Shown here: in pieces, positions 7,220 to 57,286 of the stretch
How positions within the stretch are numbered: the first letter of the stretch is position 1
Layout of the letters: each line of letters opens with the position of its first letter
Origin: Euprymna scolopes
Taxonomy: Eukaryota
Direction: 5' to 3' (one strand)
DNA: 64,000 nucleotides
Assembly (NCBI GenBank): GCA_053919585.1
Contig: CM132789.1
Notes under the pieces: generated by a model
What the model saw: the letters and a program-made list of their open reading frames with translations, nothing else
Told to the model about the DNA's origin: nothing
Database searches by the model: none
Position numbers and translations under genes: made by a program

Positions 7220-7366
7220 CTTTTGTGCATCTCGCTGTTCAACAAGTTCTTTTAAGTCGCGACTGACTGTCGTATCTTCTTTGAGTAACTGTTCAGTATC
7301 TATAAACCAGTTTAATTCAGAGTTCAGCTCTTGCATGAGGCGATCATAGGAATCAGGTAAACGGCC
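7220..7366 (-). CDS. MACF1: Spectraplakin exon, first spectrin repeat of rod
   Basis: tgtgttttag|GGC...AAG|gtaata. 147 nt, phase 0/0, GRLPDSYDRLMQELNSELNWFIDTEQLLKEDTTVSRDLKELVEQRDAQK. Confidence 0.9.
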
Positions 7367-7919
7367 CTAAAACACAGGTAGGATAGATGACAATTAAAAA
7401 AAACAAAAAACAAAAAAAAAAACAAAAAACATTTTTCAATTTAAATCTTTTATTCAGTTATAGATAGATATTCTACTAGCCTAGAGCCCTGGATCAGTTT
7501 TATTTATTTCTATTTTAAATAAGTCTATTTGAGTAGTTCTGCAAATTTGGGGGTGGGGAAAGTAACCTGAAAGGAATGCAATTAGGTGGATCATTAGTTC
7601 TGTCCCACAAAATGGAACTGTTTCCAAAGAAAAAAGAAAAACCATTAAGAGTGCTGATAATTGGGTGCATCCTTGTTCACCACAATAATGTGCCTGTAAT
7701 TCAGATATTGGATTAACCATGTAAAACTGGCAGTGATAAACTTGTTTGTTGTGTCCAGAAAATGAAATTCAAATGTTGAGAGAGAGAGAGAGTAAGTGCA
7801 ATAGAGAAAAACTTAAGAGCAGATAAAAACATTTCATTGAGTGCAGCAGGCACAAGTGGTTCTTTTAAGCAGAGAAAATGAAAATAGAAACTAACAAATG
7901 TGATTTTTATAATTTAAAA

Positions 7920-8380
7920 ATTTTTGGTACTTATTTAGAATTACACTTATTTACAAACAAAAAAAAAAAAAGGAAAGAAATACAGAAAAATCTATGTATA
8001 TACTCATCACATGATATTTAAAAAATCATGTAAATTGATCATGTAGTTTTTTTTTTCTTTTCTTTTCCTGCTTAGAAAATCAAATTTTGTGACCAAGCGA
8101 GACGTAGGATTTTTGATTAGTCATGTTTTTTGATCAAGTATAAATAATGGGGAGACAACTTAATTCGAAATATTGAGATTAAAAAATGATATAATGAATA
8201 CATCTAGTGTTAAAAATTTCTAAAAATCGTAAATTTTTACTTTGTAAATCTAAAAAAAACTTGATCATTTTAAGTGATTTTCAAAATATGACATTTTCAT
8301 TCTGTGATGAGTACATATATAATGAAGATTTTTCTGAATTTTTTTTTTTGTAAATAAGTGTAATTCAAAGTAAGCACCAT
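7920..8380. mobile_element. MITE/foldback element with long imperfect TIRs
   Basis: ggtacttatttagaattacacttatttacaaa (~7926) pairs with tttgtaaataagtgtaattcaaagtaagcacc (~8347-8378); internal arms also pair (actcatcac/gtgatgagt). Confidence 0.75.
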
Positions 8381-9421: not shown

Positions 9422-9449
9422 ATATTTGGGGATTGTGTAGTGAAACCAA

Positions 9450-9486
<37 letters not shown>

Positions 9487-14000: not shown

Positions 14001-15025
14001 TGATTTATTTCATGCTATTGCATTTTTTATTTCAGTAATTGATTAATAAGAAATTTAAAAAATAAGGTATAAATAACAGAGGGAAGAAAACTCAACGCAC
14101 TAGAAATGATCACACTATTTTATTAATATAAAGATATAGGTCGTTTTTATTACAATAATGATTAACTAGAAAATTGGAATTTATTTAGTTTTATTATAAT
14201 TGAGCTTATTTAGTAAAACAAAGATGTCAGCTGATAATTGAACGGAAGAAAAAAATGTGCATATTTAATGAATGCCAGTTCATGCTTGATAAAAATGGAC
14301 ATGCAAAAAGGAAAGATTCGATTGAAATTAAAAAAAAAAAGACGAATGAACATCACAGCAGCTATAACCTACAATACAAAGCAAATTAATAAATTTAATC
14401 ATCAAATAAACATAAAAATGCATACATGATCAGAATTTGTTAGACAATGTTTAGAAATCCAATTAATAGTTTAGTTATTAATTAAGAGGGGAAGTTCAAG
14501 TTAAGATTTTCTCCAATACAATTAAAACAAAAGATCAGAAAAGCTGAAAAAAAAAAAAAAAAAAAAAAAAAATCCAATTAAGTACATGGTGTCTTCTGAA
14601 TATTGAAAGGAAGGCAATGTCTACAAAAGAAAAATATTTATTGAGTTTTATAAACCTAATCAGTTGGTGATCCGACTGGCAAAGAAAAAAAAAGTTTATT
14701 CAATATTCAGAAGACTTTTTTTGTATTTCTTTAAACACTGATAGAATGTTGAAAGGTAAGCAATTGGTGTCCATTGTATGATGCACATACACACAGAATC
14801 ACCATGAGATAGGCCGTCCTTACAACATGCTAGCTGCTTAGAGTTCACAAAAGAAATATACTATTATGTGCACTTAACAGGAAAGAGTAGGAGGAAGGGA
14901 AGAGAGTGAGTGAGTGAGTGAGGGACAGAAACTAAGGGAGATAATCACACAAAATCCCAAGGATACACCACGCTATCATGCAACAAAAAGAAATGCTGAA
15001 TTATTGAACCTTTAATATATAGATA

Positions 15026-17900: not shown

Positions 17901-18655
17901 TATCTTTACAAGCACCCATTTTTCTTTACATTTTTATGTGTGGATGATTCTTAGCTTTATTCGATGCATACAGTTATGGCTTCACAATAAAAAAATTACT
18001 TGCTGATCTCAGATTTACTTTTAAAAATTGAACATTTCACAGTGAAAATAATTGTTTTTAGATGCTATCATCTTATGACGATGTGAAATAAAATCCATAA
18101 GTTAATGTTTAAAAAATTGTTTTTTTTTATTAAAACTAATCAGAAGGGAAGAATAGTGTTTAGACAATGGGCACGATGCACACATGCATGTGTAAATCCA
18201 ACCATCCATTTAATTAACACACTCGATACACTTACACACATGAAAAGGAAAAAAAAGGATAGAAGTTATCATGCAACATGTACTTAAAAATTTTTTTTTT
18301 TTAATTCTTGAATAAAAAAAGTCTAAGAAGCTGTTATTTGATAAAAATTGAGAAAACTATTTACAGTTGCTTTCTAATATCATTAGTACAAAAAAAAAAA
18401 AAAATCAATAAACTTCATTAAAAAAAAAAAAAAAAAGGAATCAAATGCAACGTATAATGAGATGAGGAAACAAACACAATCCACTCAACAGTTGACAAAA
18501 TCGTGAGCCAACCATTTTTTTTTCTTGCAGAACAAGTTGGTATGTCACGTGGTTAAAAACATGACTGCCCAATTTAAAGAGTTTATTGGTTAGTTGACAA
18601 ACATGAAGCGCAAAGCCAAAGGCCAGTAAGAACTCCATTCCAACGTCAAGCCTAC

Positions 18656-21600
18656 CTTACGGCTCGTCTGGTCCGAAAACTGAGTCCAAGATTTTGGTCG
18701 ATTTGTCATGTCTGCTTTTGAAGAAAGTTGCCTGAGAAACACTTCACTTTTGGCAGGTGTTTCTGCTGGCAACGGCATCACTTCTCCAAGAATCTGTTTC
18801 TCTTCAGTTCCATCAGTATCTGGTTTCATTGTACTTATCTCATTTGGCTGCTTGTCAGTAGATTTATCTCCTGATAATTCAATATAGTTTACAAGTTTTG
18901 ACTTGCTCGTTGGTAAATCCTTATTGGAAAGGTTTTCGATGTTACTTATGCCTTCAGAAGAACTCAATGTTTCTTTAGGAACAGCAACGTCTTCTGTTGA
19001 ATCACTTTCACGTGGCAACTTTCCTATAGTAGAAACTGGATCTTTTCCCAGAATGATATCACCTTTATTGTGAGTTGTTGTTTCAGCATCTCCAATTGGA
19101 TTTATGTGAATTGGTTTTGGATTTTTAATTGGTGGATTTACTGGATTATCTATCGGTGTTTTGTTTGGTGTCTTAGGAGAAGGCTGCTGGAATTTAGGAC
19201 TTGCACCATTTTTATTCAAGTCAATTACACTTTTCTGGGGTTCTGGTAACTGTGTGATAGGTTTAGTAAGTATATGATTTTCGGAATCCGAATCAGAACC
19301 AGTAGAATTAACATTAGTCAAAGAACTAGCCCTAGGTTTTTTGTCATTCAAATTCTTAGGATCATTTGGTAACTGATTACCATCTGCTAAATCTGAGTTA
19401 CTGGCATCCTTTAATCCCTCCCTTGCACTATTACTGACTATCAGCCCAGCAGCTATAGCTTCTCTATAGTTCAATCGCTTCCTTTCTCCTGGTGTGATAT
19501 AAGTTCCTTTATGAGGATCTATAATTCCACGAGAGATCGCTTCGTGCAAACAAATAATTGAATCTTGATTCAAGTCTCGAATTTCAGCAACACTTGCCGA
19601 GACTAAGCCATGTTCAATAACAGCAGCCAGGTCATCATTCTTTCCAGATGATGGATCAATGAACAAACCTGTCCTAACATTATAAAGACCTTGATCGACG
19701 GCACTGTATAAAGTAAGACCACTTGGACTAATGATAAAACCTTGCAGCAGAGCCTCGGCCAGTGTCATACATTCTCCGGTTTGGGGATTTCGAAACTCAC
19801 CAGTCTTTATATCAATTAATCCTAAACTTGCAGCTCTCCTCAATGTAATTGGCTGAACAGTGTCAGGATCTATAACCTGAGAATTAGAACGGCTCAACAT
19901 TCCAGATGCAAATGCCTCTTCCAACCTAATGTGTCCTTTGGCCGGGTCGTTCAAAGCAGAAAATTGTACAGCATTGTTCACTTGTTCCACAGGGCATGAT
20001 GTTGAATCCTGATCTTCAGTGCCATTGCTGAGTAGGAGGGTTTTGGATTTATCACCTTCTTTAACAAGCCACCCTTCTTTTTTGGCCTCGTATAAATTCA
20101 TGATAGCATTCGACACGGGATGTTTGAATGTCCCTTTCTCTAATGATAACAATCCAATTGAACTTGCCACAAGAATATTCATGCATTCTTGAGTTTGAGG
20201 ACAGACAATCTGATCAACCAAAGGGTTTAAAAGACCCATCTTAAGAGCATTCAATATCGTCATGGATTTATCTTGGTTTGGATCTTTCAAGTGACCCGTC
20301 GTTGGATCATAAAAGCCCTTCTCAAGGAAATCATTTAAAGTAATGTCTGGTTTGGAATGCTTCAAAGACAAAGGTAGCATCAGTTCAGAGAGTTCAGAAT
20401 TGTGTAATATAAGGGGACTCCGAAGGGATTCCTGCTGTGGTTTTGGGTTGCTAGCAGGATTTGAACGAGTGCTCGTAATTGATATATCTTGTACGACTAT
20501 TTTTGATCTCTCAGTTACAAGTACCTCTTCAGTATCTGGACAGTTTTTAATCAGCGACAAACTGCGTTTTTCGGTCCCTACAGTTGCACTTGGCTGTAAG
20601 ACAATGGATGTTGCTGTGTTTAAGCTCCCTTCAGAAACCAATTCCTGCAAATTATTGATGGAATCCATAGAAGCTGCTTGAGGAATCTCAAAAAGGATTC
20701 TTTTAGCCACAGCCTCTGTTAATGATAAATTTGACGTAGCAGTTCTAACAGTTCCAATGTTTAGATCAAAAACATGGGTTTCTACAGCTTCAGATAGAAA
20801 GAGATTTTGAGACTCGTCAATGGTTAATAATGTGCAATCGATTCTGATAAAACCAGAGTCTATACTTTCTTTTAACGATTGCCTCTCCCCAGTTGTTGTA
20901 TTAAGCATCTTATGAGATTCTTCATCAAACAGGCACTTACTAACAGCATCAGCAAGTTGTAATTGTTTTTCACTGATGTTCAAAATAAGGCCAGATTTCA
21001 TAGCTTTTTCCAAAGGGATTGTACTTTTCTTCTGCCGATTTAGCACAGAAACCGTTTTACTACTGACAATGCCTTTCTGCAGGGCTTCATTCAATGTGAT
21101 AACCAATCCAGTTTCTGGATGTTTCACTAGCGACTTGTTGCCATCAATCAAATTACTGGATAAAGAATCAATTAAATTCCTATAATTCTGGGTTCTTGGA
21201 TCCAAAAACATCCGACGCTGATGATCAAATATGCCATATTCACAAGCAGATTTAAGTCCAAATTTTGGAGACTTGGAATCAACAAGCAAACAGGTGTCCA
21301 ACGATTCTCGATAAGGGATGTAGCTACCTCCTGGTAAAGCGAGCGTATAATTATCAGGATTCAGGATTCTTTTGCGAATTGCAGCTTTACAAGGAATATA
21401 CGATTTAAGATGAGCATCCCAAACTAGAGGTTCCCTGAGACGATCTTGTATGCATTCCTCATCAGATTGGTTTAAAGAAAAGTCCTGCTTTTCTGATCTG
21501 TATAAATTGTTTGAGGGAAGAATCAACTGGGATTTTAGACTTTCTGTTATAGAAAGTTTTCCAAGTTGAGAGGAGAATTTCCCACTTGAATCTAGAACGT

Positions 21601-24600
21601 CTTTTTCGATTGCTTGCTTAAGAGTAAGAGGGTGAGAATGGCCATGAAATGAGAGCGGTTCATCCTTTATCAACATGGAATTGACGGCATCTGTAAGAGA
21701 CATACTTCCTCCTGTATATGGACTATAAACAGTATTTGAATGATCATCGTAGAGTCCGAGTTGCACCGCTTCAATAATAGACATGCCACTTGCAGAAATA
21801 TCCGTCATTAGATTCCTATTCAGAATGGAAGCAAGGTCAATATTGTCTCCGTCTGAATTATTAAGAGTTCCATTCATAGCAATAAACCAACCTTCATCAA
21901 TTGCTTGCTCTAAAGAGACATAAGGTGCATCCTGTGAACGCTTAACCAAAGTAATTTTTGGATCAATTATTCCAATGTCAATAGCGTCTTGGATGGTCAG
22001 TTGTTTGCCTGTTAGCGGATCTATGACATATTTGAATGTAGGATCAAAGAGACCTGCCTGAATGGACGTCATCAGGCTGACTGAACACTGATCAGTGGCA
22101 AGTCTTATGTAACCTTTATCGACTGCGGTTTTCAAATCGACAACTTCCTTCTCGGTATGAACTTGAGAAAGTTCAATGTCTAAAACTCCTTTGGTGACAG
22201 CCTCATCAAATGTTAGAAATTCTCCTTTATGAGGAATCTTAGTTAGGTTTGGCTTTAACATACCACTCAATACAGCATCCCGCAAACATTGGATATTACC
22301 AGTTTGTGGATCGATGAACTGGCAAGTCTTTGCATTATAGATTCCTTGTTTGACAGCTTCAATAAGACTTATTTCTGAAGCACCTTTATCCTGAAGTACC
22401 AAACCTTTCCTCACAGCTTCTTCCAATGGGTAGGTCTTACAACCGACATTGTAAGAGCCATCATCTGCATTCAAGATATTTTGATAAATGGCACCATCAA
22501 CAGTAAGAAGAGTTTGGCTATCAGGATCTCGTACAGTGATAGTGTCTTTATCTAAGAGTCCAGATTCCAAAGCGCAGGTGAATGAGCCAGAAAGTGATGA
22601 AGAAGGATCAAGGAATGTTCTAGAGCTAGGATCATAGATTCCTTCTTCAAATGATTCTTGGAGGGTTAGCCCCGGCTGAGAGGATATATCAATTATTAAA
22701 CCTTTCTGCAAAGCATTTACAAATGAAATCTCTTCATTTTCAGAAAAATAATTAGCTGTCTGAACATTAAATATTTCTCGACTGACTGCGCTCTCAATAG
22801 TTAAAATCTGACCCAAATCATCTCGGATCCGGATGAGATCGGTGTCGAGGAGTCCAATGTTAACAGCATCCGAGAAGGTCATTTCTTCATTATTGTCTGG
22901 ATTCAAGAACAGGTTATTAGACTCATCATAAAGTTCTTCATCAAAGATTTCTGTAAGAGACAGTTTCAAAGGAGCACGACATCTTGTAATCAAACCCTTT
23001 TCTAATGCGAAATTCAAAGCGATTGCTTGTCCAGATGAATTCATCATTTTACCAGAGTCAATGTCAATTATCCTTTTCGATATGGCTTCACTCAATGCCA
23101 TCAGGTCCCAGCTGACAGGATCTCGAACCAAAGATTCCATATGAATTATGCCTTCTTGCAAAGCTTTAGGTAATGGCATAGTCGATTTATTAACTGGATG
23201 GGTGACTGTATTATTCACAGAGTCGTACAACCCCTGCAAAATGGCCTCATCAAGGGTGATAGGTATATCATTGTTCTCTATACATGTTTGGTTAAATAAG
23301 GAAGCGATGCTTTCGCGTCTAGTTCCAGTCATTGATGCTTTTCTTTTAGTGGTCAGACTCGGCAGTGAAGATCTTCGTGTCAGAACATTCAAGGAAGGAA
23401 TCAAACCAAACTCTTGTCGATCAGAAGAAAAGGAAGCGCTTTCTAAGGTTGAATCAGAATCAGTGTCTTGTACAGAATCCAACGAATACATTTGCTTGCA
23501 TGATTTTAAAGCAGACGAGAAAGAACCTCTTTCGACTAAGTCTTTTGCTTCTGTGGAGATTTTATGAGATAAAAGAAATCCAACATCCACAGCTTCAGGA
23601 ATTGACATTTTTTTGTTGTTTTGAAGATCCAAAAAGTGGCAAGAATCAGAAGTGCAGTGAAGAATCTCTTTGGAAATGGCTTCACCAAGCTCAATAATAT
23701 CAGATGTTTGTGTATTAATCACTTCCTGAGAAGTTGGGCTTAAATATCGAAAAGCAACCATCTGAGTGAGAGACAACAATTCTCCGGTAGATGGCTCTTT
23801 AAATAGGCTAACTTCATCATTATAATTTCCATCATAGACAAGATCGGCAATGGTTGTTTCTTTTCCAGTTATTATAAAACCTTTTTTAACAGACTCAGCC
23901 CAAGAAAGCCACTCGTTATTTGAAGAATCTCTTATTTCGCCAGTTTTCGCATTGAAAAGTCTTTTTTGCGTAGCAGCAATGGCTAAGTTCACATACTGCT
24001 TATTTTGGACATCCAGCAATCGTGTCTGAGCACTTACCGCCCCTTTTGTTATGAGATCAAATAAACCGTGCCCTAATTTATCCTGAAAATCAAAGACATC
24101 AGATTCTTCCCTTGGATTGCACTGAATGAGGCCAACCTCAAATGCAGAGAGCAAAGAATAAGAGATTTTGCTGTTAGGAATTAAAATGTTTCCATTCTTA
24201 GGGTCAACGTAACCCATGTCAAAAGCTTTCTCCAAGTTCATAGAAGAACCAGACTGCAGCAATAACTGCAAGCCATTTGCTGGGAGGATATCAAAGTTCA
24301 GACTATCTCTCAAATTAAGTAAACTTCCTTTTACTGGATGAACAAACTGATGACTGACAGGATCCCAGAATCCTTCCAAAAGATGCTTCAAGTAAGATTC
24401 TAACATACAAACATGATCCAAAGTGCCATTTATTTTTGGACTGTCATTGTCAGATGGTTTGCAGGTTAGTAGAACAGAGTCCTCAGGATGTGGGTTCCAA
24501 GGTTTCAAAGTTGGGCTGGAATTATGAAAGCCATTAGGAATTGAAGGGTCATGGATGAATGTTGCTGCTGCTGCTACTTCTTGTCTCACAGAAACTACAT

Positions 24601-24646
24601 TTTCAGGAGACTGTTTGCCCTTCAGATTAGCAGAGACATTTTTAGC
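18656..24646 (-). CDS. MACF1: Spectraplakin giant exon 2: plectin repeat domains, 1,997 codons
   Basis: Covers the 1999-aa ORF. Acceptor gaatttcag|GCT AAA AAT at 24646, in frame 19 codons upstream of the ORF-track start. Donor CGT AAG|gtaggc at 18656. 5,991 nt, phase 0/0, many plectin repeats plus a Pro/Ser-rich tail. Confidence 0.92.
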
Positions 24647-26712: not shown

Positions 26713-26751
26713 ATCTGATACCAACAACAGCTGAACATAAGCTGGTGATTT
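26713..26751 (-). CDS. Candidate 39-nt cassette exon (KSPAYVQLLLVSD)
   Basis: gagcttttagaacag|AAA...GAT|gtaagt; phase 0/0; an internal in-frame CAG would give an 18-nt version. Confidence 0.4.
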
Positions 26752-27989
26752 CTGTTCTAAAAGCTCAGACACATGAACATGGCTTAGGGGATTAAGCAGT
26801 GCAACAATTTTGGCAAAAAATGTCTATGAATGGCATAAATTATTAAATACAGGTAAAGGTTTTATTATTAGGTCTGGAAAGATGTGTTTGTTTTGAATGG
26901 AATAATTCACTCATACAAATGCAAAAAACAAGAGGAAAAATTCACAATTAGGGACTGGAATAAGGATGTTCAGAAGGAGTAAGATCTTCTGTAAGCAAAC
27001 AAGCTGCTAGGATGATGGTGGTCACTAACCCTTTTATCAAGGGAGGTAAGTCAGTCAAAAGAATTTGCTGGAAGTTGTAAATTAGGTCATCACTACTGAG
27101 CTTTGATAGGTAACAGTGAATTGTTATTAAGAGAAATTAGGGATAAAATATCAATAAAATATCAATATTGACAGAGATAATGATAGCTACATGTGCTGCA
27201 TCAGAGATGCATAAAAATCTAAAATAGCACGTCAACTTGAAAAAAAAAAAAAAAAAAAATTATACATTGCGATGTACATGGAAAACTCATCAGGGGATGT
27301 GGATTTTCTTGTCACTTTTTTAAATTTATGGTATTTATGCAATTTAACGACCATGTTATCATCGGAATCATCTGAGCGGTTTATGGAAAATGCAGGAAGT
27401 TACTGAAATTCTAAGCAACTTAACCTGAACATGAAAAAAATCATAAGGACGTTTGCTTGCTATAATTGGTTTATTAAAAAAAAAAAAAGAAAAGAAAAAG
27501 AAAATCTAAATATTTACCTTGATTTGAAAAAAAAAAAAAAAAAAAAAAAATGATTTTTGTTTGCTATGAGTTAATATTCAAAAAAATATTAATTCATGAA
27601 ACTTGTTTTACAATGAATGATTTTTTTTTTTAATTTGAATTTTGATTTCCTAAAAGTTTCATAAAAATTGTCCAATTCAAGAATACTGGTTTCATTTTTC
27701 AATTAATTTTTCATTAAATTAGCTAATGTTTGCATGAAAAAAAATCATGAAACTTTTGTTTGGCGCCTTCTGATATTTTATGTAAAGTGCCTGGACAATA
27801 GCATAAGTACCTAATTTACTTTTCTCTGCCTCCTCCCCTCACACTGTTTCAAGCATATTCTAAGGACAGTCGCCACAACCTACTCTATTTTCATGAAACA
27901 CTTTCTGCCACATTTCTTGGTTGTACATACAGCTGGTTGTGAACAAAGATTCTCACCTCATTTCTCAAGAACAGCTTATTTTTTTGTAC

Positions 27990-30636: not shown

Positions 30637-30684
30637 CGGTACATCTGAGGAATTAATGTGAATGTATATCGATGCAGGTTTGGT
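30637..30684 (-). CDS. Candidate 48-nt cassette exon (TKPASIYIHINSSDVP)
   Basis: ccctgtgctgcggctgaacag|ACC...CCG|gtgagc; phase 0/0; lies in a non-repetitive, GC-richer island. Confidence 0.4.
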
Positions 30685-37300: not shown

Positions 37301-40300
37301 ACCTGGCAGACTTGGCTTGATTTTATCCTCTGGTTTTGCATAAACAATGGTTGTCGTCGGTTTTTCCGGTACTGTTGGACCTTTTGTTTCAGCTTTCTTG
37401 GTAGGCGTGGATGGCTTTGATGCTATTGTAGGGGTTGCTTGATTCTTCTCCTTTTGCAGAGATGGTTTTGGTGGCACTTCTGGTTTCTGTGGAGATTTCT
37501 TTTCATCCAGCTTCTTTTTCACTGCATCACAAACTGCCTTGCCCGCCAAAACTGGGCCAAGTATTGGAGCACCAACAACGGCAAGAAGTCCCATTTTCAC
37601 AGCTTCTTTAGCATTTAATTTCTGCCCACTTTTTGGATCAAGGATCTTCCCAGACTTTTGGTCAACGATCCCCCTTTCTATAGCCTCTGCTAATGGTACA
37701 TTTTCATTTTTTCTACTATCATAAACTTCCATGTGGGACCCAGAGTCCAGACCCTTTTTAATGACTGTGTCTACAGAAAGCACCTGTTGTGTTTTTGGAT
37801 CAAATATATTACTGGATCCCGGCTCGTACATGCTCTCAACAATGTGCCTGTCGATAGCAGACTTCAATGGAACTTTTTTCAGATTTTTTGTATCAGTTAC
37901 TTCTGCAGTTCGCTTATCAACTAATCCAAGTTTTAGTGCTTTTTCAAATGGAATTTTTTCATTGGTTGAAAGGTTTTCCACAGAAATAAAGTCAACGCTG
38001 ATGAAATTATTCTTTATGGCTTGCTCAAGTGTGAATTGTTGTCCTTTTTTGCTAAGGAAGAGACGTTTGTCGGCGTCAAAATATCCAAGAGCAACAGCAT
38101 CAAGAAGATTAATAGACTTTTGGTCCTCCTCTAGAGCCAAATCTTGCAGACGTGAGCGATCCGTTTCATTTTTAATCATTCCAGTGTTTGGATCAATTTT
38201 GTTGGTCTGGAAACATTCTTGCAGAGTATATTTGGCACCAGTTTTAGAATCGGTAATGGCTTCCTTCTCAATGTTAATAATTCCTTGGTCAATTGCTTCG
38301 GAAATAGTCATTGTTGTTCCCAAAGAAGGCACAGTGATCAATCCAGTATCTTGGTCGATAAGGCCTAACCGTGCTGCTTCTGCATATGAAATTCCAACAT
38401 TAAGAGGTTGGCCATCCTGTAATTCATCCAATTTAGAGAGACGTTCTCCCGAAGGAAGCAGAGAATCGTCAACATTTCTCTCAACGTCAAACTCAATATT
38501 TATGGATTCTGTAGCGAGAGATTGATTGCTAACACCCCCAGAAGCCGTGACACCAGATTTTTCTAGTTTCATATCGATGAGAGTTGGAGATTTTGGTGAA
38601 GTGGTACTCTTATCAAGAATTTCAGGTTGTGTAAGGGTAGTACTTTCTCTGTCTGCAGCTGTCGAAGAAGTAAGTTGGGAAATATCTGTAGTTTTAGACA
38701 TTTTGATGAAACCTTGTTTTAAAGCGTCTTTCAAATCCAAATGCTCTCGAGATCTAGAATCGAAGAATGTGTTTTGATCCACATCTACGATCCCTTCTTT
38801 CATGGCTTTTGATAGAGATATTTCTTTGCCAGTTCTCGGATCGACGACAGAAGTCACTTTACTCAGTGGAAATTCAGGTGATTCTGCCATGATACTACTT
38901 TTCAGAACGTCTTCCGTGTTTTGTTGTGAAGTCACCTCGCCGTGAATCAGGCCCTTTTCAAGAGCTGCTGTTATAGCCATAGTTTCACCTGTGGAAGGGT
39001 TTGTATAAAGACCCTTTTCAACACTGAGGACACCTTTTTCTACGGCACTATCGTAGGACACCATTTCCATAGTGACAGGATCAATAACGCTTGTAATGCT
39101 CAAGGTGACCGTTTTTGAAGCGACATCTTCCACTATGGTCGTCTCAAATGCCTCTTCATCTTCAGTGATATGGATGCTACTGATTTCGACTCTCTCTGTC
39201 TTTGGGAGCTCAGCAGTTTCTGTGAATATCAGCCCTTTGTGAATGGCATCATCTAATGATGAGATTTCACCTGTCATAGGGTTCGTGTAAGTTCCTTTAG
39301 CGGGGCTAAATATTCCTTCATTCATGGCTTCGTTGACAGACATCTTCTTTCCTGTTCTTGGATCGAGTACAGAAGACACTGCTACGGTTGTCTGCTTAGT
39401 AGTAATGATACGGTTGCCATCTTGTTCAATGGTTGGCACAATTGAAGAAAGTTCAGCATCAATAAGTTTCTTTTCAATTGCTTCCGTGATAAACATCTTT
39501 TCCATGGTCAAAGGGTTGACATAAAGCCCTCGACTTGCATCGATGATTCCCTCGTCGATGGCTTCAGCCACCGTCATTACCTCGCTTGTCACAGGGTGAA
39601 CAACACTGTTCAGGTTAAACGTTTTCGTTTCTCGTACCCAATCTGCTTTTATAGCTTGTGGTACGGAGCTCAAGTCTTCAGCTATAACAAGACCAATTTC
39701 AATAGCTTGACTAATCGGTATTCGCTTCTCCTTGCCATTTTCAAATCCAACATACTGGCCTTTGTCTTGATCTAAGACTCCTTGGTGAATAGCTTGGCTT
39801 ACACTCAACCGTTCCTTGGTGATTGGATCAAGGACTCCAGTGATTGAAAAGGCAACTGTCTCCTTGATCGGGCCTTCAGCCACTTGAGGTGGCTCACTTG
39901 TATATTCGGCTACGATGAAGCCCTTCTTCACAGCTTCATTTATTGGCAGCTTTGTGCCAGTCGTGAGGTCGGTGAAGTGACCAGAGGTTAAATCTAAAAT
40001 TCCATTCTCGATGGCTTCATCTACATCGATGGTTTTTTTAGTTCTTGGATCAACAACAGATTTTATGAACATGTTGCGAACTTCTGAAATAATGGCTTTA
40101 ACTGGTTTCGTCATTGCAATTTGGGTAAATGTATAGTTTTCAGCAGATTTACTGACAAAAGCTGATTCAATAATGGACTCCTGAGACCTGGCAGCATCTG
40201 GAGACGTTCGAGTGACAGGATCTTTCGCAGACTGATGAAAATCTGGTTTGGGAAGTGAATCGGTACTATCAAATCCTATTCCAGGAAATTGTCCTGGAAC

Positions 40301-42376
40301 ATTACTCGATGGCCATTGAGTGGATAAACAAAGTAATCCTCTATAAATAGCATCTTCAATCGTCATCATTTCCCCTGTATTCGGATCTTTGAATGTTCCG
40401 GCTTGTTCTGCTAGTAGACCCTTTGACACTGCCTCGGAGATGGTTATCGGTTTTGGCACAGCCTTTACAGGCTCAGACTCTACACAAGTTGTAACGGTCG
40501 TAGAAATGACTAGTGGACTAACTAAATCCAACAACATCTGTGCACTGTCTGGCGTCATAATCTGTTCTGCGACAGCACGCTGTACTGGCAACAGATTACC
40601 CGATTTATCTAATATGTTTCCAGATTCTATGTCTAAAATTCCTTCATTAATTGCTTCAACAACTGACAGCATTTTACCACTTGGATCTGCAATCATTTTC
40701 TGAGTTAGTCGATCAGCAATTCCTTCATCGATGAAACCATGCTTGGCTGCATCGATAATGGAGAGTTTCCTTCCTGTTTGAGAATCAACAAACTCACCCT
40801 GAGGTGTCAAAACACCGGATTGGAATGCTTCTGGGATGGACAAGAGAGAACCTGTATTGATGTCAAGTACAGTTTTAGGTGGGAAGGAAATATCTTCGCT
40901 GGCAATCTTGATATGACCTTCAGAGAGGGCATCATAGATTGAAAGCTTTTGTTGCGTGGCAGGCACGGTTATCTGCCCATTATAGTCCAGAATACCCCTT
41001 TGAAGGGCATCGTTAAATGAAAGGACATCATTAGTTTTGGTCATAATCAAACTTTTTGTATCGGCATTAAGAATTCCATTGTTGATGGCTGCGGCAAATG
41101 TGACTGTCTGGTTTGTGTTTGCATCGAATATTGAACCGTCTTCCCTGAGAGCACTTTTGTGCACGATATCCGACAAAGTCATAGGTTGAATGAGCAGCTG
41201 TCTGCGATGAGCCTCCGACAATGAAATCCACTTACTCGAATTCACATCCAGAAACTGTCCAGATTGTGGGTGAATAATACCCTTAGCGACTGCTTCTGTA
41301 AGGGAAATCAATGCAGCACCTTTTGTGGGGCGAATCTCTTTAAGAGAAGGATTAACGTAACCCTTCTCAACAGCCTCCAAGATCGTCATCTCCTGATCTG
41401 ATATAGGATCACATATTTTACACTTCAATTCATCATACATCCCCTTTTGCAGAATCTCTGCTAAGCCAAGCGCTTTATCAGCACCTGGGAAACTTTTAAG
41501 CCCAAACAAAGCTTGGGATTGAGTAATTTCGCTGACATTTACAGCTGGGCTTATGCCAAGCATGCTGGGTAATTTAGAGGAAATCAATCCTTGTTCATTG
41601 GCATCTTTGACTGGGATCATATTTCCAGTTAAAGGATCAACCACTTTGTTAGTGACTGGATCAAAAAGACCTTTCTGAATAGCTTCTGTTAGAGTGCATT
41701 CCTTGCCTGTGTTTGGATCAATAAGGCCACATGCCGTGTGTAATTGCTGCTGGATTTGGCCGCTGACGAAACCATGTTTGACAGCATCGGAAAGAGGTAT
41801 TTGGGCATGCGTCTTTGGATGGATGAACATGCAAGATTTCTTATCAAGTAACCCTGACTGGAATGCATCCAATGCCGTCATCTTTTGTTTTGTGATAGGA
41901 TTTAGAACAGCGGAGATTTCTAGCACGTTGCCCGGACTTGTTTCAACCTTTGACTTGACCACACTGATCACATTCTGTATTACTTTGCCTTTCGGCTTTG
42001 AAATATGTAAAGTAGTGTCAGAGGGCAGATTGCCATTCACAGAGGATACCTCTGGAGCTTCAGATATGTCGGATAAAGCTACACCTTTGGCATCTCTGCC
42101 GACTTTCTGGATAGATTTCACTGATGTTTTGGTTGTAGACGAGAAAGAGCTGACAGTGTCCAGGGAAGCTAACGGAGAGTGTTGGGAAATGGTAGACACA
42201 GATGAAGTTGATGTGGAACTCATGTAGCTGGCAGGGATGCTGCAAAGGCTATCAAATTCATTGAATTGCTGGAAAAACTCCTGCATATCTTCATCCACAA
42301 GCATGGATGAACGTTTTGCCAGTTCAGCACGGAATGTTCGAAGAAGAGGGATATTTTCGTCTATTACCATTTGAAA
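31319..42376 (-). CDS. MACF1: Spectraplakin giant exon 1: plectin (plakin) repeat domains, 3,686 codons
   Basis: Covers the 3709-aa ORF. Acceptor tttactttcag|TTT CAA ATG at 42376 and donor GAT TCC|gtaagt at 31319. 11,058 nt, phase 0/0. Dozens of 'DPxTGxx(M/L)S(L/I)xEAIxxG(L/I)(L/I)D' plectin repeats. Confidence 0.95.
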
Positions 42377-46346: not shown

Positions 46347-46348
<2 letters not shown>

Positions 46349-46882: not shown

Positions 46883-46913
<31 letters not shown>

Positions 46914-50947: not shown

Positions 50948-51025
50948 CTATCGATCTTTCAGTTCACTTTCGAACCATTTTGATTTCAAACCATTCATCT
51001 TAGCATATTGGCGATAAAGCTTCAT
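50948..51025 (-). CDS. Candidate alternative terminal exon (MKLYRQYAKMNGLKSKWFESELKDR*)
   Basis: Acceptor tctccctgcattctatatcaatttcatatgtag, phase-0 open frame of 25 codons plus TAG, AATAAA at 50844-50849 on the minus strand. Sequence-only prediction. Confidence 0.45.
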   Translation of the reverse strand: MKLYRQYAKMNGLKSKWFESELKDR

Positions 51026-51403: not shown

Positions 51404-51418
51404 CTTGTGACTTGGATT
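51404..51418 (-). CDS. Candidate 15-nt microexon (NPSHK)
   Basis: caactaaaacaattggcactgctggttggctctttag|AATCCAAGTCACAAG|gtaacc; phase 0/0. Confidence 0.4.
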
Positions 51419-52385: not shown

Positions 52386-55300
52386 ATGGGGGTGATGGGA
52401 TGAAATAGATGATGAGGTGGGTCTGACGTGAGAGGAAATATGATTGGTTGGTGGGGGTATGTAAATGTCAAAGTAGAAAGATTAATGATAGGTTGGATGG
52501 GAAAATAGATTAAGAGATAAAAGCTTCTTGTTGCTGCTACTAGATATGCAAACACAATTACAAAATGTGCAGCATCAAAAAGCAATAAAAACAAATATTA
52601 CAAACAATCATGCACGATAAAAACAAAAATGCAGACTAACATGCAAGTGCGATGATGGTTCCAACCAGAGATCCAGCAAATTTTTATTATTTGTGCTTTA
52701 AAACTGTCAATGCCACCAGCTGAGATATATCAGATTGACAATGGTTATAAAACTTACCCCAACAACATTTGAATTAAATTTTATTCATCCTCAAAATATC
52801 TTAAGATTTTTATTTTTACAATTATTAGTCATGTCTATGAAAGCTTTTATAAAAAATATTAAAATAAACCTATAAAAAAAGATTACCTAAAATGAATGAC
52901 TTAGAATTAGGAAAGTTTTTTTTTTTTGAAAACAGAACTGTATTATCCTGAGAATGATAAAATGTCTTATTTTGGCATTTACAAAACATACATATGTATA
53001 CATACATATTTTTTTTTTTTTGCAAGAAGTGTTTCTCTATCATTAACTGAGTCCATGTATTTCATATCAAGATTTTCATGTAAATATAGAAACTAACAAA
53101 TTTATCTTATTTCAGATTGGAAGGCATTTGCTTTTGGAGAATTTTCTTTTTCCCCACAAATTTTTCTTTAAGTACATATGTATTGTGGAAAGAGAAGGGA
53201 TACTGCTATGTGCATTATTATAATTTCATAGTTAAAAATAAATTGCAGGGAAATTATGGTCTATTAATACAACAAATATCAAATCTAAATAAGTACAAAA
53301 AAAATTATTTGTAAACCATTCCTAACACATTGATAAGAAATAAGTAAACATCTGTATAAGATTACCCAAATGCAAATCATGCACAACAACAATCGATTAG
53401 GTTATGATTGATAATCCAACATGGAACAATCTGTAACTATTGGAACAAAAGTTATAGTTTGTCGACTTAGAATGAGTGCTTTATGCCCAATCGATAGTTG
53501 AATATGCTTAAACTTGCGCTCATGTTTGCATTAACTACTAATTCCTATTAATCCCTAAATGTGCATTGAATGGATATCATAATTCTAAATTCGCTGCACC
53601 TTATCATAAGGATCCATATAAAATTTTGGCCAGATCAGCCTCATAGTTTGAAAGTGGAATGGACAGACAGACAGTAAGAGAATATAGATAGTTATCTTTG
53701 CCAAATTCTTCCTTAATATAGATGAGTAAAAGTAAAGTTTCAGATGTGATATTTCAGTAAAATCATAATACCTTTCAATAATGGAGAGATTTAATAACAG
53801 TAAAAACAAAAAAGAAAAAGATGTTTGTCTGTTATATAAGGAAGACATTTAAAAAAGATTAGAGGATAGTCTTGCGTAGGTTTTAAAATGAATATTACTA
53901 TTTAATGTTGAATATCACATGTCAATGCAGAGCTGCAATGCTTTACAACTGTCAAAATGTTGGTCCTAAACAACTATGCCTCTTTACAGTTTGTCTTTTG
54001 CAAGTCTCTTATCTGGTTTTATAATATAAAATCTTTGAGACTCTTCAAAGATGGCCAATTATGATGGATACCATCGTTTCCTTCATATTCTAAAAGTTCC
54101 CCAGTTTTTTTTTTCTTTTACAGTCTGTGATTGCTGAAACATCCCTACATAATCACCTTATTCTTGAAAATAAGATCTCATTGACTGGGTCAAATGGTTT
54201 CTTTTTACTGGATTCAATCCAAAGCATTGACAATAAATCGGATCAAGTGGAGAGAAACCACTTAATGACCTAACTGTCCAATTTGAGGAACAAGTGACAA
54301 TAAATGTGCGGTAGTTATTCTTACATTTGGATTGTCATTCTTTTTCAATTGACAATTTGATTAATCTTTACAAAAAGGTAAACAATAACCAGAATTATTC
54401 ACCATATTTTATCAAATTTCAGTTTATAAACTTATTTTCAAAGCATTAGCAATCATTTTGTATGTATTCTTTTCTTTGGAAATGACAAATTATGTAGACC
54501 TTTACGTATCTTTCTCCAATCTGACTACAGTGTGTCAGAATTCCTTTTTAGTTTAAGAAGTACCCAGAATATGTAACTATAGAGAATATACATGTCTCTG
54601 TGCCCTTGATGTTGTTGAATGAAGTTAGAAAAATCTTTTGAGGTGAAAAATAAGACAATGCACTTAGAAAAAAATCTTCATGCCTTTCAATAATTTCTTA
54701 ATTCAAAAACTTAATTTCATAAAGTGGATTTTAATAGATATCATTTGATTGCTATTAAAGAAAAACACATGCGCCAATACTTTTAAGTGTTTATGTGGGG
54801 TATTTTTTTTTAAGTTTAAATTAAACATGTCCCCAGGTGGAGATAACGTCTATCAATTGAGGTACAAAGGCTTATAGCTCTTCAAGACCAACATCTAATG
54901 GCTGTGTGAGTGGCCAGAAAATTTTCTGGACACTTTCTCTACTGTAAACTCAACCCTGTATTATATATTTCGACTGTAGAAATGCAATTAAATAACTAAA
55001 ACTTGATTTTTTTTTCCCACCCAAAACTGCAAGTGTTGCAAATACGTTTTTGCCTATATAAAGGATTGGCTATGTGAAATCTAGCTGACCAACTAGAAGT
55101 TTCTGTGTAGAAAAATTTGACAATGTTGTATACTAATAATATACAGAGGCTTATGAAAATAGGTAATTGTTAATAAAAAAAATCAAGTCAATGAGACTTA
55201 TTTAAAAAAACAAATAAAGTTTTAATGTTTTGGTTAAAAAAAAAAATAATTATCTTTCTCAATTAAAGAGATGAAAGTTTCATCTAAGTAAATCCAAAAT

Positions 55301-57202
55301 ATTAATATAGAGGAGTAATTTTGTTAAAAATTAAAAGGAATTATAAAAGTGTCTTTGAATGCGTTTCCTGATTCATATAAACTGATATGTTGAAGCATGC
55401 AAAGTGATTCAGTGGTGATTGCATTGTTGGTAATGTACAAGTGTGTTGAAGTATAATCACAAGTAAAAGGAATTGAAACTGATAAGCAGTGATTTGAGCA
55501 GAGAGTGAACAGCAGCAAAATGGAGATCTGAAAAACCTTAATGTTTACAAGATTCAGAAATTTTTTTTAATTAAAAAAGATTAAATTTCTAAATTTTTTT
55601 AATGGTCATTTTAAAAAAAAAAATCAAATAATCATGATTAAGTTTAGCAATCATCTCTGTACAAAAAAAAACAATTTTCTATCAACTAAGTTTCGCAATA
55701 TTTGAAATTCTAACATTTTATGAATACGTTATTTTAAATAGCTAAGTCCTGTTTTATATCATAAAGAAATGTGATACAAAGCAATTTTTGGGCTAATCAA
55801 TTTTATTGTTTAAGTTCTAATATTGAACATTAAATGAAAAAATATCAAATTAAATTGAAGTTTTAAACTTTAAAAAATGTTTTCTTAAAAATGAAGAAAA
55901 ATAACCCGATTATAAAATCAAGGTTCTTGGAATCAAGATAAATATCAAATGAGTAAGAAATAATGTGTATGTGTGGAGTATTTGATAGTTTTAAGCCTTG
56001 ACAATTAGTATATAACAGCTGGTGATTGATGATGAACGTGTGTAACCTTACCTACTGGAGATTGAACGTTGAACGAATTTGGCAAGCAAATATCAAATAC
56101 CTCAACATGGTTGAAGTCCAACATCAAGGTATATGAAGTTTTGGATTATTTTTTTTGTTGGCTTTATACTGTATTCAACAAAATAACTTGAAAACAAGTC
56201 ATCAAGCCAAGTCAACACAAGGGTGGAGAAATAAACACAAGAAAAAAAAACAACTCTAAAGATCCATACTGACACAATCATATCGAATACTGAAAGATTG
56301 AGATTATCTTCTGACATTTTGATTCAATTAGGCTAAAAGAAAAGAAACATTAAGATTTGCTGTCAGCCTAAAACATAAGATTGAAATAGACATCTAGAAA
56401 ATAAGATCTTTTTTTTTAAATTTTAAATAAATGTTAGTAAAAATCAACAAACATATTTGCTGAGATTGACATGGTTTTTTTCTTTCAGTCAATTCATTGA
56501 TAGTTGCCTGAAAATCCTTAAACCTGTTTCTATGTGATTCATTATCAACACAAAACATGAAAGCAAAACAGTAAAGGAGAGAAATTTTAAATGTTTTGAT
56601 AAATTACAATAATTTACGTGGGGAAAAAAAGAAATATATTTAGAAATTTTAATCCTGTATTTAAAATATATAAAATCTTAAATTACAGCAGATAGTCAAA
56701 TGTTCAGAAGTTCACATAGGTGTTTGGTTTGAGTGTGTAAGAGAATCTTGGTTAAATGGTTTAGTTTGGAAACAAAGATAACATTTTCAGATGCTTTCCT
56801 GAATAAGGATGCTTGTCAACATGCTTTAGACGGAAAAAAAAGAAAAGAGCACTAAACAAACAAGGTTTTTATATAAATAACAAATCAAATGAAACATAAA
56901 GGATTCTTTATGTCTCATTTTTTTTTCCACAACCAGTTTTTAAATATTAGAAATTTCAGACAGAAAAAAACAAACAAACAAACAACAAAAAACAAGTCAT
57001 TCAATTCTGGATAAGAAACAAACATGCAACGAGGTCTCAATCTGATCTTTAAAATTAAACATTCAAGACATTTACATGAGGGAAATTAAAACGTTTCATG
57101 CAACACTAACTGCAATACTGATCCAGGGCTGACGAGATTACATGAAAAGAAATTATCTTTGCTGATTTAAAAAGCAGAAACTAAAAAGTTGGAAAGACCT
57201 AC

Positions 57203-57286
57203 CTTAGCTTCTCGAATATACTGTCCACCAAGACGATTCACAGATTCTATTTGGTGTCGGCGCTCTCCAAGGGCATTATATATGTC
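57203..57286 (-). CDS. MACF1: Spectraplakin exon, plakin domain
   Basis: ttttcag|GAC...AAG|gtaggt. 84 nt, phase 0/0, DIYNALGERRHQIESVNRLGGQYIREAK, resembling the invertebrate Shot plakin-domain end motif. Confidence 0.9.

What the first reader, a model, noticed from the sequence alone, without database searches (positions are those of the whole stretch)
7366..57203. Candidate isoform switchboard: phase-0 micro-exons and stop exons at every domain boundary
Seen: the three large introns at the plakin/plectin-repeat/spectrin boundaries contain non-repetitive islands with AG..GT-bounded phase-0 mini-exons (51404, 30637, 26713, 14803) and stop-containing candidates (56168, 51025, 7566). There are also read-through stops followed by AATAAA after both giant exons. 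Inference: one locus could yield plakin-only, plectin/desmoplakin-like and full spectraplakin proteins. That would parallel C. elegans VAB-10A/B and BPAG1e/a/b, but be more modular. Caveat: short AG..GT segments and AATAAA arise often by chance in AT-rich introns.
Basis: inference. Interest (0 to 1): 0.7.

Follow-up and report, generated by a model that had tools for sequence, protein, structure and literature searches.

The report
Spectraplakin gene; proposed micro-exons are chance
This is a mollusc spectraplakin (MACF1/dystonin/Shot-type) gene with two giant in-frame plectin-repeat exons; the listed micro-exons and stop exons look like chance splice-site matches, and only a possible alternative end after the second giant exon has real support.

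Summary
The window holds the middle of a minus-strand mollusc spectraplakin gene. In order it has plakin exons, two giant plectin-repeat exons (G1 42376-31319 and G2 24646-18656) and spectrin exons. A GAS2 domain lies 120 kb further downstream.

The three introns hold 645 open phase-0 AG..GT segments, against about 602 in shuffles. AATAAA occurs once per 300-650 nt.

- None of the seven candidate exons is conserved as an exon in relatives' genomic contigs.
- None adds residues in mollusc homologues.
- Candidate 30637 sits in a dispersed repeat with at least 1,500 copies.
- An unspliced RNA-run contig covers the upstream part of candidate 14803 and its proposed acceptor.

One part of the inference gains support, for G2 only.
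- The 345 nt after its weak donor are 77% identical to a relative (84% over the first 100 nt). G2 third codon positions are only 63.5% identical.
- The AATAAA after the stop is conserved in place.
- One contig, from a run whose library type is not recorded, reads from G2 through the donor and ends about 365 nt downstream.

G1 shows none of this. All exons B-G are phase 0-0. Mollusc gene models join G1-like or G2-like ends directly to the next spectrin exon.

The switch is therefore most likely inclusion or skipping of the giant exons, plus perhaps polyadenylation after G2 (about 50%). This is a new member of a known kind. The scan noted both features before, on this same DNA.

The parts
57203..57286 (-). 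Exon B (84 nt, phase 0-0), end of the plakin-domain region
   Evidence: Acceptor and donor read. tblastn to Mytilus DST and a Candidula protein. 85.6% identical to the relative's contig L003.
44727..44945 (-). Exon C (219 nt, phase 0-0), last small exon before the giant exons
   Evidence: Conserved in L001 and L002. In homologues it follows exon B with no extra residues.
31319..42376 (-). Giant exon G1 (11,058 nt, 3,686 codons, phase 0-0), plectin repeats
   Evidence: Pfam Plectin at 741 bits. Boundaries. The GTAAGT donor is conserved in L001 and L002. RNA runs hold 70-90% of the sampled words of 30401-40400, which is mostly G1.
31156..31318 (-). G1 read-through tail (25 codons, TGA 31243-31241) and AATAAA 31161-31156
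   Evidence: Present. The tail is not conserved and carries indels. The AATAAA is not conserved in place. Identity is 62-63% against 90% in the adjacent coding sequence.
18656..24646 (-). Giant exon G2 (5,991 nt, 1,997 codons, phase 0-0), plectin repeats; weak donor AAG|GTAGGC
   Evidence: Pfam Plectin at 139 bits. Boundaries. The donor position (RK|V or RQ|V) is conserved in many mollusc G2-like ORFs. A Dreissena model joins the G2-like end to an exon-D-like sequence.
18291..18655 (-). Block after the G2 donor: 21-codon tail, TAA 18592-18590, AATAAA 18587-18582, conserved non-coding sequence. Candidate composite-exon 3' end.
   Evidence: 18655-18311 is 77.4% identical to L005, and the first 100 nt are 84% identical. 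G2 third codon positions are 63.5% identical. The first 30 nt are identical and the AATAAA is conserved in place. Single copy. X15 contig 15 reads from G2 through it to 18291.
7220..7366 (-). Exon D (147 nt, phase 0-0), first spectrin-rod exon after the giant exons
   Evidence: 85% identical to L006.
51404..51418 (-). Candidate micro-exon '51404' (15 nt)
   Evidence: Among the 4 best chance-type segments. No match in the relative's intron. Homologues have no extra residues between B and C.
30637..30684 (-). Candidate micro-exon '30637' (48 nt, or 8 nt from the nearest AG)
   Evidence: Inside the dispersed repeat 30723-30450, which has at least 1,515 first-look copies. The surrounding 860 nt correspond to only about 66 nt in L002.
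26713..26751 (-). Candidate micro-exon '26713' (39 nt; an 18-nt variant starts at 26730)
   Evidence: Two short blocks and a GTAAG are shared with L002. The segment lengths are 39 against 43 or 48 nt, and the peptide is not conserved. Single copy.
14803..14829 (-). Candidate micro-exon '14803' (27 nt)
   Evidence: Weak pyrimidine tract of 0.47. X5 contig 14813-15068 is collinear with the genome across its proposed acceptor. No GT..AG-type joint is listed. Its orthologue was not available.
56124..56168 (-). Candidate stop exon '56168'
   Evidence: It lies in the conserved single-copy island 56347-55981, but its acceptor AG is not conserved. No AATAAA or ATTAAA within 300 nt of its stop.
50948..51025 (-). 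Candidate stop exon '51025'
   Evidence: The relative shares only one isolated 15-nt match. The acceptor is not conserved.
7525..7566 (-). Candidate stop exon '7566'
   Evidence: It has the best acceptor of the set (pyrimidine 0.76) and AATAAA just after the stop. The ORF and acceptor do not align with L006. Only branch-point-like blocks nearby are conserved.
55981..56347 (-). Conserved single-copy intronic island with a conserved GTAGGTAAGGTT motif
   Evidence: 69% identical over 388 nt to L003. Indels are not in threes and there is no conserved ORF. Single copy. Function unknown.
26837..27054 (-). Conserved single-copy island in intron G1->G2
   Evidence: Other collinear islands: 31136-31061, 30202-30116, 29006-28921, 25094-24986, 24869-24762 and 24708-24647.

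Best explanation
The stretch is the central part of a mollusc spectraplakin gene, probably cephalopod, on the minus strand. The exons of the plakin-domain end (A, B, C) are followed by two giant plectin-repeat exons, G1 (3,686 codons) and G2 (1,997 codons). The spectrin rod follows (D-H and beyond), and a GAS2 domain lies 120 kb downstream.

Every exon from B to G starts and ends in phase 0. G1 and G2 can therefore be included or skipped singly or together without breaking the frame.

The seven listed micro-exons and stop exons are most likely chance AG..GT matches in AT-rich introns. Isoform choice more likely rests on two things:
- Cassette use of the giant exons. This is inferred from the phase structure and from gene models of other molluscs.
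- Use of G2 as a composite terminal exon, at about 50%. If its weak donor is not spliced, translation would run on for 21 codons to a stop. The transcript could then end at the conserved AATAAA or further downstream. The product would be a plectin/VAB-10A-like protein without the spectrin rod.

Shown here: gene structure, exon phases, chance statistics, cross-species conservation, and one read-through contig. Inferred: actual skipping or inclusion in this species, and cleavage and polyadenylation after G2.
For: Gene identity.
- Plectin repeats in both giant ORFs.
- tblastn of Mytilus DST, Candidula and Gigantopelta MACF1 proteins maps exons A-C and D-H on the minus strand.
- Spectrin hits just downstream on the same contig and strand.
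- GAS2 at C7:50843651 on the minus strand.
- Run labels say mollusc.

Exon phases. B, C, G1, G2, D, E, F and G all have lengths that are multiples of 3.

Chance level.
- 645 open phase-0 segments against about 602 in shuffles, and 97% of AG sites meet a stop within 150 nt.
- 15 good-looking segments against 9.4 +/- 3.1 in shuffles, and 4 against 3.3 at a stricter cut.

No conservation of the candidates as exons. Candidate 30637 lies in a high-copy repeat. Homologues are contiguous over B|C and over D-H. An unspliced contig crosses the proposed acceptor of 14803, and no GT..AG-type joint is listed.

Cassette use.
- Gigantopelta MACF1 X10 joins a G1-end-like sequence to an exon-D-like sequence after a 17-residue linker.
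- A Dreissena model joins the G2-like end (...EERQ) directly to an exon-D-like sequence.
- The donor position of G2-like ORFs is conserved across molluscs.

G2 terminal use.
- 30 identical nt after the donor.
- AATAAA conserved in place.
- 77.4% identity over 345 nt, against 63.5% at G2 third codon positions and 67% in the last 300 coding nt.
- The tail begins VGL.LEW in three cephalopod-like ORFs.
- The block is single copy.
- X15 contig 15 (2,344 nt) has 0 mismatches over 18949-18448 and 3 over 18377-18291. It runs from inside G2 through the donor to 18291. X15 has almost no other cover of the intron outside repeats.
Against: Limits of the RNA evidence.
- Only one 6-kb stretch (12950-18949) could be laid with RNA-run contigs.
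- Contigs drop rare isoforms, so absence of junctions is weak evidence.
- No spliced junction of this species was seen at all, so cassette use here is inferred from other molluscs' gene models.

Limits of the G2 terminal-exon evidence.
- The library type of run X15 is not on record.
- Its contig passes the conserved AATAAA by about 270 nt and ends at a genomic A12 run. That would also fit oligo-dT internal priming on pre-mRNA.
- The other three runs did not cover the last 100-300 nt of G2.
- Conserved intron flanks are typical of regulated cassette exons. The 73 nt upstream of G2 are also 81% identical.
- The tail's frame and length are not conserved beyond 10 codons.

Candidate 26713 keeps two short conserved blocks and a GTAAG in the relative, so it is not fully excluded. 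The orthologue of 14803 was not available.
Confidence: 0.7

Rival explanations
1. The conserved block after G2 is purely intronic. It would be a splicing-regulatory flank of an alternatively included cassette exon. No G2-terminated mRNA would exist, and the X15 contig would be unspliced pre-mRNA or internal priming at the A12 run.
For: The upstream flank of G2 and several intronic islands are conserved too. The donor position is conserved across molluscs, and a Dreissena model splices it to the next exon. The contig runs past the AATAAA and stops at a genomic A-run. Run X5 shows low-depth unspliced cover all over intron 3, so pre-mRNA or DNA is present in such runs. The tail frame is not conserved after 10 codons.
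Against: Conservation runs for 345 nt and is higher than in the adjacent coding sequence. It includes an exactly placed AATAAA. X15 shows cover of this block but essentially none of the rest of the intron outside repeats. Its contig passes the donor without a break.
Confidence: 0.4
2. At least some of the listed micro-exons and stop exons would be used to make plakin-only or linker-variant isoforms.
For: 51418-51404 is among the 4 best-scoring chance-type segments. 26713 keeps two short conserved blocks and a GTAAG in a relative. 56168 lies inside a conserved single-copy island. 7566 has a good acceptor and AATAAA right after its stop. Small cassette exons do exist in mollusc spectraplakins, for example a 21-residue cassette near the C-terminus that differs between Gigantopelta X8 and X10.
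Against: Numbers equal chance. No candidate has acceptor, donor and frame all conserved. 30637 is in a repeat and absent from the relative. Homologues have no residues for them. Cover across the 14803 acceptor is unspliced.
Confidence: 0.07
3. The conserved single-copy intronic islands are functional RNA-processing or transcription elements. The main ones are 56347-55981, with a conserved GTAGGTAAGGTT, and 27054-26713, which ends near a GTAAG. They could be alternative first exons of internal promoters giving isoforms that start with plectin repeats, as the MACF1 'isoform 4' naming suggests. Or they could be recursive splice sites in the long introns.
For: The islands are collinear with the relative, are 67-77% identical where the rest of the introns does not align, and are single copy. 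A donor-like motif is exactly conserved in the first island. The Gigantopelta X8 and X10 models start inside the plectin repeats.
Against: No RNA evidence was obtained for these places. Conservation continues well past the donor-like motif, which fits an enhancer or a splicing silencer or enhancer as well. There is no conserved ORF or ATG. No Rfam family matches.
Confidence: 0.15

Closest known systems
Drosophila short stop (shot) plakin-repeat exon
   Same: A single very large exon encoding plakin/plectin repeats lies between the plakin-type N-terminal part and the spectrin rod. It is optionally included to give gigantic isoforms. The shot exon is 10,497 nt (PMC2173965). G1 here is 11,058 nt.
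   Different: Here there are two giant repeat exons (11.1 and 6.0 kb) separated by a 6.7-kb intron. Inclusion or skipping in this species was not shown directly.
C. elegans vab-10 (VAB-10A / VAB-10B)
   Same: One spectraplakin locus gives a plectin-like product ending in plectin repeats or a MACF-like product with spectrin repeats, EF hands and a GAR domain. It does so by joining a common 5' region to alternative 3' regions (PMC2199363). A G2-terminated product here would be the VAB-10A analogue.
   Different: In vab-10 the two 3' regions are separate sets of exons. Here the repeat exons keep conserved donors and can be internal, as the G1|D and G2|D junctions in mollusc models show. Termination would come from non-use of a weak donor in a composite exon, which is not proven.
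Vertebrate DST/BPAG1 (e, a, b) and MACF1 (a, b, isoform 4)
   Same: Modular isoforms with or without a plakin-repeat domain. The same domain set is present here: plakin, plectin repeats, spectrin, GAS2 (reviews PMC3352950 and PMC4914211, listed; the domain comparison rests on my own knowledge of these families).
   Different: No evidence here for a plakin-only product. The CH domains and promoters lie outside the window and were not examined.
Composite terminal exons / intronic polyadenylation (for example the IgM secreted-versus-membrane switch; general knowledge, not looked up here)
   Same: A weak 5' splice site, then a short in-frame tail, a stop and a poly(A) signal directly downstream of an internal exon.
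   Different: Cleavage and polyadenylation at this site were not observed. Only one read-through contig and sequence conservation support it.

Membership tests
Spectraplakin (MACF1/dystonin/Shot/VAB-10 type) | Plakin domain upstream of the repeats | tested here: met
   Exons A-C align to residues about 1040-1340 of Mytilus DST and a Candidula protein. Both carry CH, SH3_10 and spectrin-like Pfam domains. A direct SH3_10 scan of the genome found nothing, and its controls were silent too.
Spectraplakin (MACF1/dystonin/Shot/VAB-10 type) | Plectin/plakin repeats | tested here: met
   PF00681 at 741 bits in G1 and 139 bits in G2.
Spectraplakin (MACF1/dystonin/Shot/VAB-10 type) | Spectrin-repeat rod downstream on the same strand | tested here: met
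   Exons D-H align to the rod of Gigantopelta MACF1 X10. PF00435 hits at C7:50963318 and C7:50890935, minus strand.
Spectraplakin (MACF1/dystonin/Shot/VAB-10 type) | C-terminal GAS2/GAR microtubule-binding domain | tested here: met
   PF02187 at 72 bits at C7:50843651-50843770, minus strand, 120 kb downstream. That it belongs to the same transcript is inferred from strand and order.
Spectraplakin (MACF1/dystonin/Shot/VAB-10 type) | N-terminal calponin-homology actin-binding domain | not tested
   It lies upstream of the window and was not searched.
Composite terminal exon with intronic polyadenylation (G2) | Suboptimal 5' splice site followed by an in-frame stop | tested here: met
   The donor AAG|GTAGGC matches 7 of 9 consensus positions. 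TAA follows after 21 codons.
Composite terminal exon with intronic polyadenylation (G2) | Poly(A) signal, conserved | tested here: met
   AATAAA 18587-18582 lies within an identical 18-nt block in L005.
Composite terminal exon with intronic polyadenylation (G2) | Transcripts that read through the donor and end with a poly(A) tail | tested here: inconclusive
   One contig in run X15, whose library type is unknown, reads through to 18291 at a genomic A12 run. No tail can be seen in contigs. The other three runs have no cover there.
Alternative micro-exons / poison (stop) exons (the seven candidates) | Splice junctions in RNA | tested here: not met
   Only 14803 could be laid. It has unspliced cover across its proposed acceptor and no GT..AG-type joint. 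The other six could not be tested, because only one read-laying run is allowed.
Alternative micro-exons / poison (stop) exons (the seven candidates) | Conservation of splice sites and frame in related species | tested here: not met
   Candidate 26713 is partly conserved in sequence but not in length or frame. The orthologue of 14803 was not available.
Alternative micro-exons / poison (stop) exons (the seven candidates) | More such segments than chance | tested here: not met
   645 against about 602, and 4 against 3.3 at the strict cut.

The most novel reading that the evidence does not exclude
The locus would use its conserved, single-copy intronic elements as real switches. After G2 there would be a composite-exon poly(A) site giving a plectin-like giant protein of plakin domain plus about 5,700 residues of plectin repeats. 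The islands with conserved donor-like motifs (about 56050 and about 26713) would be internal first exons or recursive splice sites. Those would give products that start with, or consist only of, plectin repeats. One invertebrate gene would then cover the roles of plectin/desmoplakin, epiplakin-like and MACF1-like proteins.
Probability: 0.15. Interest if true: 0.55.

Novelty: new member of a known kind. Interest (0 to 1): 0.3.

Why it matters
Spectraplakins are the standard example of one gene making very different cytoskeletal linkers. Almost nothing is known about them in molluscs.

The useful results here are a clean exon map, with two giant in-frame plectin-repeat exons, and a short list of places worth testing. 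These are the conserved block after G2 and a handful of conserved intronic islands. They replace seven coordinates that chance explains.

If the G2 end is used, cephalopod-like molluscs would make a plectin-like protein from the spectraplakin locus through a composite exon. That mechanism lies between the fly arrangement (internal exon) and the worm arrangement (separate 3' exon set).

Tried and rejected
RNA evidence.
- Read laying is capped at one call of 6 kb.
- The laid stretch is noisy. Repeats at 13150-13350, 15350-15550, 16350-16550 and 17150-17950 draw contigs from other copies at depths up to 1e5. All listed joints lie in or between such repeats.

Spliced own-species proteins.
- The protein collection returned no own-species entries. 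The best hits were 75-83% identical relatives. No junction peptides of this species could be read.

Are the relatives' 6.5-kb G2 contigs transcripts?
- Five runs give contigs with the same ends. I rejected the transcript reading because both ends are homopolymer T runs and the acceptor-side intron is present.
- The same run also gives a 5.3-kb purely intronic contig. These contigs are therefore genomic-type and say nothing about RNA.

Is the post-donor peptide tail translated?
- In a second mollusc group the tail is conserved for about 8 residues and then diverges with indels. This is inconclusive.

Other negative or failed steps.
- An exact-ORF look-up of the island at 56317-56105 found nothing.
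- Three contigs had no DNA available.
- Rfam and tRNA scans of the whole window found nothing.
- RNA folding around the G2 donor gave z-scores of -0.15 and -0.34, so there is no significant structure.

Full report
WHAT IS IN THE WINDOW

The window has about 30% G+C and contains no N runs. Two very long open frames lie on the minus strand, and both are full of Pfam Plectin repeats: 741 bits and 139 bits. Run labels for sequencing runs that hold this DNA say 'mollusc metagenome' or a coded organism. The genome is 5.9 Gb, and the window is C7:50964001-51028000. A cephalopod origin is my inference from genome size and run labels, not a tool result.

Local tblastn with annotated mollusc proteins maps small exons on the minus strand on both sides of the giant ORFs. 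The proteins were Mytilus DST, two Candidula proteins and Gigantopelta MACF1 isoform X10. Reading the splice sites gives this exon map:
- A: 59394-59235
- B: 57286-57203
- C: 44945-44727
- G1: 42376-31319
- G2: 24646-18656
- D: 7366-7220
- E: 4476-4321
- F: 1824-1651
- G: 1263-1180
- H: starts at 169

Every exon from B to G has a length that is a multiple of three and starts in phase 0. Spectrin-repeat hits continue downstream on the same strand. A GAS2 domain lies 120 kb further on. The gene is therefore a true spectraplakin.

The middle one separates two plectin-repeat exons rather than two domain types.

CHECK OF THE OBSERVATION

The listed coordinates are the last base of a candidate micro-exon or the first base of a candidate stop exon. 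The motifs are there. The read-through stops after both giant exons and the AATAAA hexamers are also there.

Their number is what chance gives.
- The three introns contain 645 open, phase-0, AG..GT-bounded segments of 6-60 nt. Dinucleotide shuffles give about 602.
- 97% of all AG dinucleotides meet an in-frame stop within 150 nt.
- AATAAA occurs once per 297-645 nt.

Of 826 segments of 6-120 nt, 15 have a donor matching at least 7 of 9 positions, a modest pyrimidine tract and a pyrimidine at -3. Shuffles give 9.4 +/- 3.1. At a stricter tract cut the count is 4 against 3.3. None reaches the usual quality of the real exons, which mostly have donors of 8 of 9 and tracts of 0.59-0.94. Because all exons here are phase 0-0, 'phase 0' does not single out any candidate.

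CONSERVATION

Word searches with G1, G2 and exon D found genomic-type contigs of two related species. They are 76-82% identical in coding DNA. They are L001; L002 and L003 (two stretches of one 64.7-kb contig); and L005 and L006.

Most intron sequence does not align, but a set of collinear islands does.
- Intron B->C: 57133-56997, 56347-55981, 52750-52546 and 51893-51832.
- Intron G1->G2: 31136-31061, 30202-30116, 29006-28921, 27054-26837, 25094-24986, 24869-24762 and 24708-24647.
- Intron G2->D: 18655-18311 and 14567-14352, plus short blocks just upstream of exon D.

The candidates fare badly.
- 51404: no match in the relative.
- 51025: shares only an isolated 15-nt word, and its acceptor is not conserved.
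- 56168: lies inside a conserved island, but its acceptor AG is GCTG in the relative. No poly(A) hexamer follows its stop within 300 nt.
- 30637: lies in a segment of about 860 nt that corresponds to only about 66 nt in the relative. It is part of a dispersed repeat with at least 1,515 first-look copies in this genome.
- 26713: keeps two short blocks and a GTAAG. The segment is 39 nt here and 43 or 48 nt in the relative, and the peptides are unrelated.
- 7566: its acceptor and ORF do not align.
- 14803: the relative's contig starts 240 nt too far downstream, so its orthologue could not be read.

At protein level, mollusc homologues run from exon B into exon C, and through D to H, without extra residues.

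RNA EVIDENCE

Twenty listed runs, six of them on record as RNA, hold 70-90% of the sampled words of 30401-40400, which is mostly G1. G1 is therefore present in many transcriptome-type runs.

This stretch covers the end of G2, its read-through region and candidate 14803. It was also the candidate stretch with the fewest tandem repeats. All four runs are kept as contigs, so rare forms may be missing.
- None of the listed joints has the CT..AC ends that a minus-strand intron would show. All listed joints lie in or between high-depth repeats.
- Run X5 has low-depth pieces collinear with the genome all along the intron. One of them (14813-15068) runs unspliced across the proposed acceptor of 14803.
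- Run X15 has one 2,344-nt contig (record 15). It starts inside G2 and passes the donor (18656/18655), the stop and the AATAAA. It has no mismatch over 18949-18448 and three over 18377-18291. It skips a poly-T tract and ends at 18291, at a genomic A12 run.
- X15 has almost no other cover of the intron outside repeats.
- The other three runs do not cover the last 100-300 nt of G2, which proves nothing.

THE REGION AFTER G2 IS SPECIAL; THE ONE AFTER G1 IS NOT

Against L005, G2 coding DNA is 76.1% identical. Third codon positions are 63.5% identical and the last 300 coding nt are 67% identical. The 100 nt after the donor are 84% identical, and the whole 345 nt to 18311 are 77.4% identical. The first 30 nt are identical. 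The block around the stop and the AATAAA is identical over 18 nt. The block is single copy.

The read-through peptide begins VGL.LEW in this species and in two relatives, one of them only 48% identical overall. Its length and frame then differ. So most of the block is constrained as non-coding sequence.

The donor itself is real. In dozens of G2-like ORFs from other molluscs the conserved part ends in RK or RQ followed by V, which is the GT of the donor. A Dreissena gene model joins ...EERQ directly to an exon-D-like sequence. The donor is weak here (GTAGGC) and in another mollusc contig, L004, where it is GTATTT.

This pattern fits a composite exon: spliced on to the spectrin rod, or left unspliced and ended by polyadenylation. 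It equally fits a regulated cassette exon with conserved flanks. The 73 nt upstream of G2 are also 81% identical. I put the terminal-exon reading at about one half.

After G1 the picture is different. Identity is 62-63%, next to 90% in the coding DNA. Indels are large, the tail is not conserved, and the AATAAA is not conserved in place.

HOW THE LOCUS MOST LIKELY WORKS

The giant exons are symmetric cassettes. Gigantopelta MACF1 isoforms X8 and X10 join a sequence 47% identical to the end of G1, after a 17-residue linker, to an exon-D-like sequence. The Dreissena model joins the G2-like end to the same exon.

This parallels the optional 10,497-nt plakin-repeat exon of Drosophila shot (PMC2173965). 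If the G2 end is used, it also parallels the plectin-like VAB-10A product against the MACF-like VAB-10B product of C. elegans (PMC2199363).

A plakin-only product has no support. I did not build or search a joined (spliced) protein model. Exons were searched one by one by reference.

VERDICT

One 'non-repetitive island' is in fact a repeat. The switchboard of micro-exons and stop exons is not supported. The more general idea of a modular locus is reasonable and already known for this gene family. It gains specific, testable support only for a possible alternative end after G2.

The conserved single-copy intronic islands are the most interesting loose end. One of them carries an exactly conserved GTAGGTAAGGTT.

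The scan had already noted both the micro-exon pair at 50844-51418 (s1-295765) and the two giant phase-0 exons (s1-295633), on this same DNA.

Noticed in passing
window 55981-56347 (minus strand), motif near 56050: Single-copy intronic island, 69% identical to a relative over 388 nt. It holds an exactly conserved GTAGGTAAGGTT (an acceptor-like TAG next to a donor-like GTAAGG) and about 75 well-conserved nt after it. No conserved ORF. It could be a recursive splice site, an alternative first-exon donor or a splicing or enhancer element.
   Followed up: partly
window 51914-52383: Minisatellite with a 34-nt unit in 13.7 copies at 96% match, G-rich on the plus strand. Conserved islands flank it (52750-52546 and 51893-51832), and in the relative these lie only about 57 nt apart. 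The array therefore expanded in this lineage.
   Followed up: partly
window 30450-30723: Dispersed repeat of about 275 nt, with at least 1,515 first-look copies in the genome (40 scored at 76-85% identity). It is absent from the orthologous intron of the relative.
   Followed up: partly
window 13150-13350, 15350-15550, 16350-16550, 17150-17950: Intronic repeats that attract contigs from RNA-type runs at very high summed depth, up to about 1e5 at 17550-17749. Most contigs are 95-99% alike. These are expressed or very abundant repeat families, not this locus.
   Followed up: no
window 35243-35836 (inside G1): Tandem duplication of a 321-nt unit (107 codons), 1.8 copies at 85% match. This is a recent in-frame duplication within the plectin-repeat exon.
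   Followed up: no
window 60884-61123 (minus-strand ORF): A short ORF whose translation looks like a fragment of a retrotransposon reverse transcriptase, in the intron upstream of exon A. This rests on reading the translation only.
   Followed up: no
window 24647-24708, 24762-24869, 24986-25094: The 62 nt upstream of the G2 acceptor are 81% identical to relatives, and two further islands lie within 450 nt. This is the pattern expected for a regulated alternative exon.
   Followed up: partly
L002 9999-10001 (relative's G1): In the relative's assembly the G1 ORF is split into two adjacent called genes (6040-9999 and 10001-17632). The cause is a frameshift or an assembly error there.
   Followed up: no
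P0025 / P0148 (Gigantopelta aegis MACF1 isoforms X10 and X8): Both gene models start inside the plectin repeats, without CH or plakin domains. They differ by a 21-residue cassette near the C-terminus (around residue 5190 of 5,378). Small cassettes and repeat-first isoforms are thus modelled in another mollusc.
   Followed up: partly
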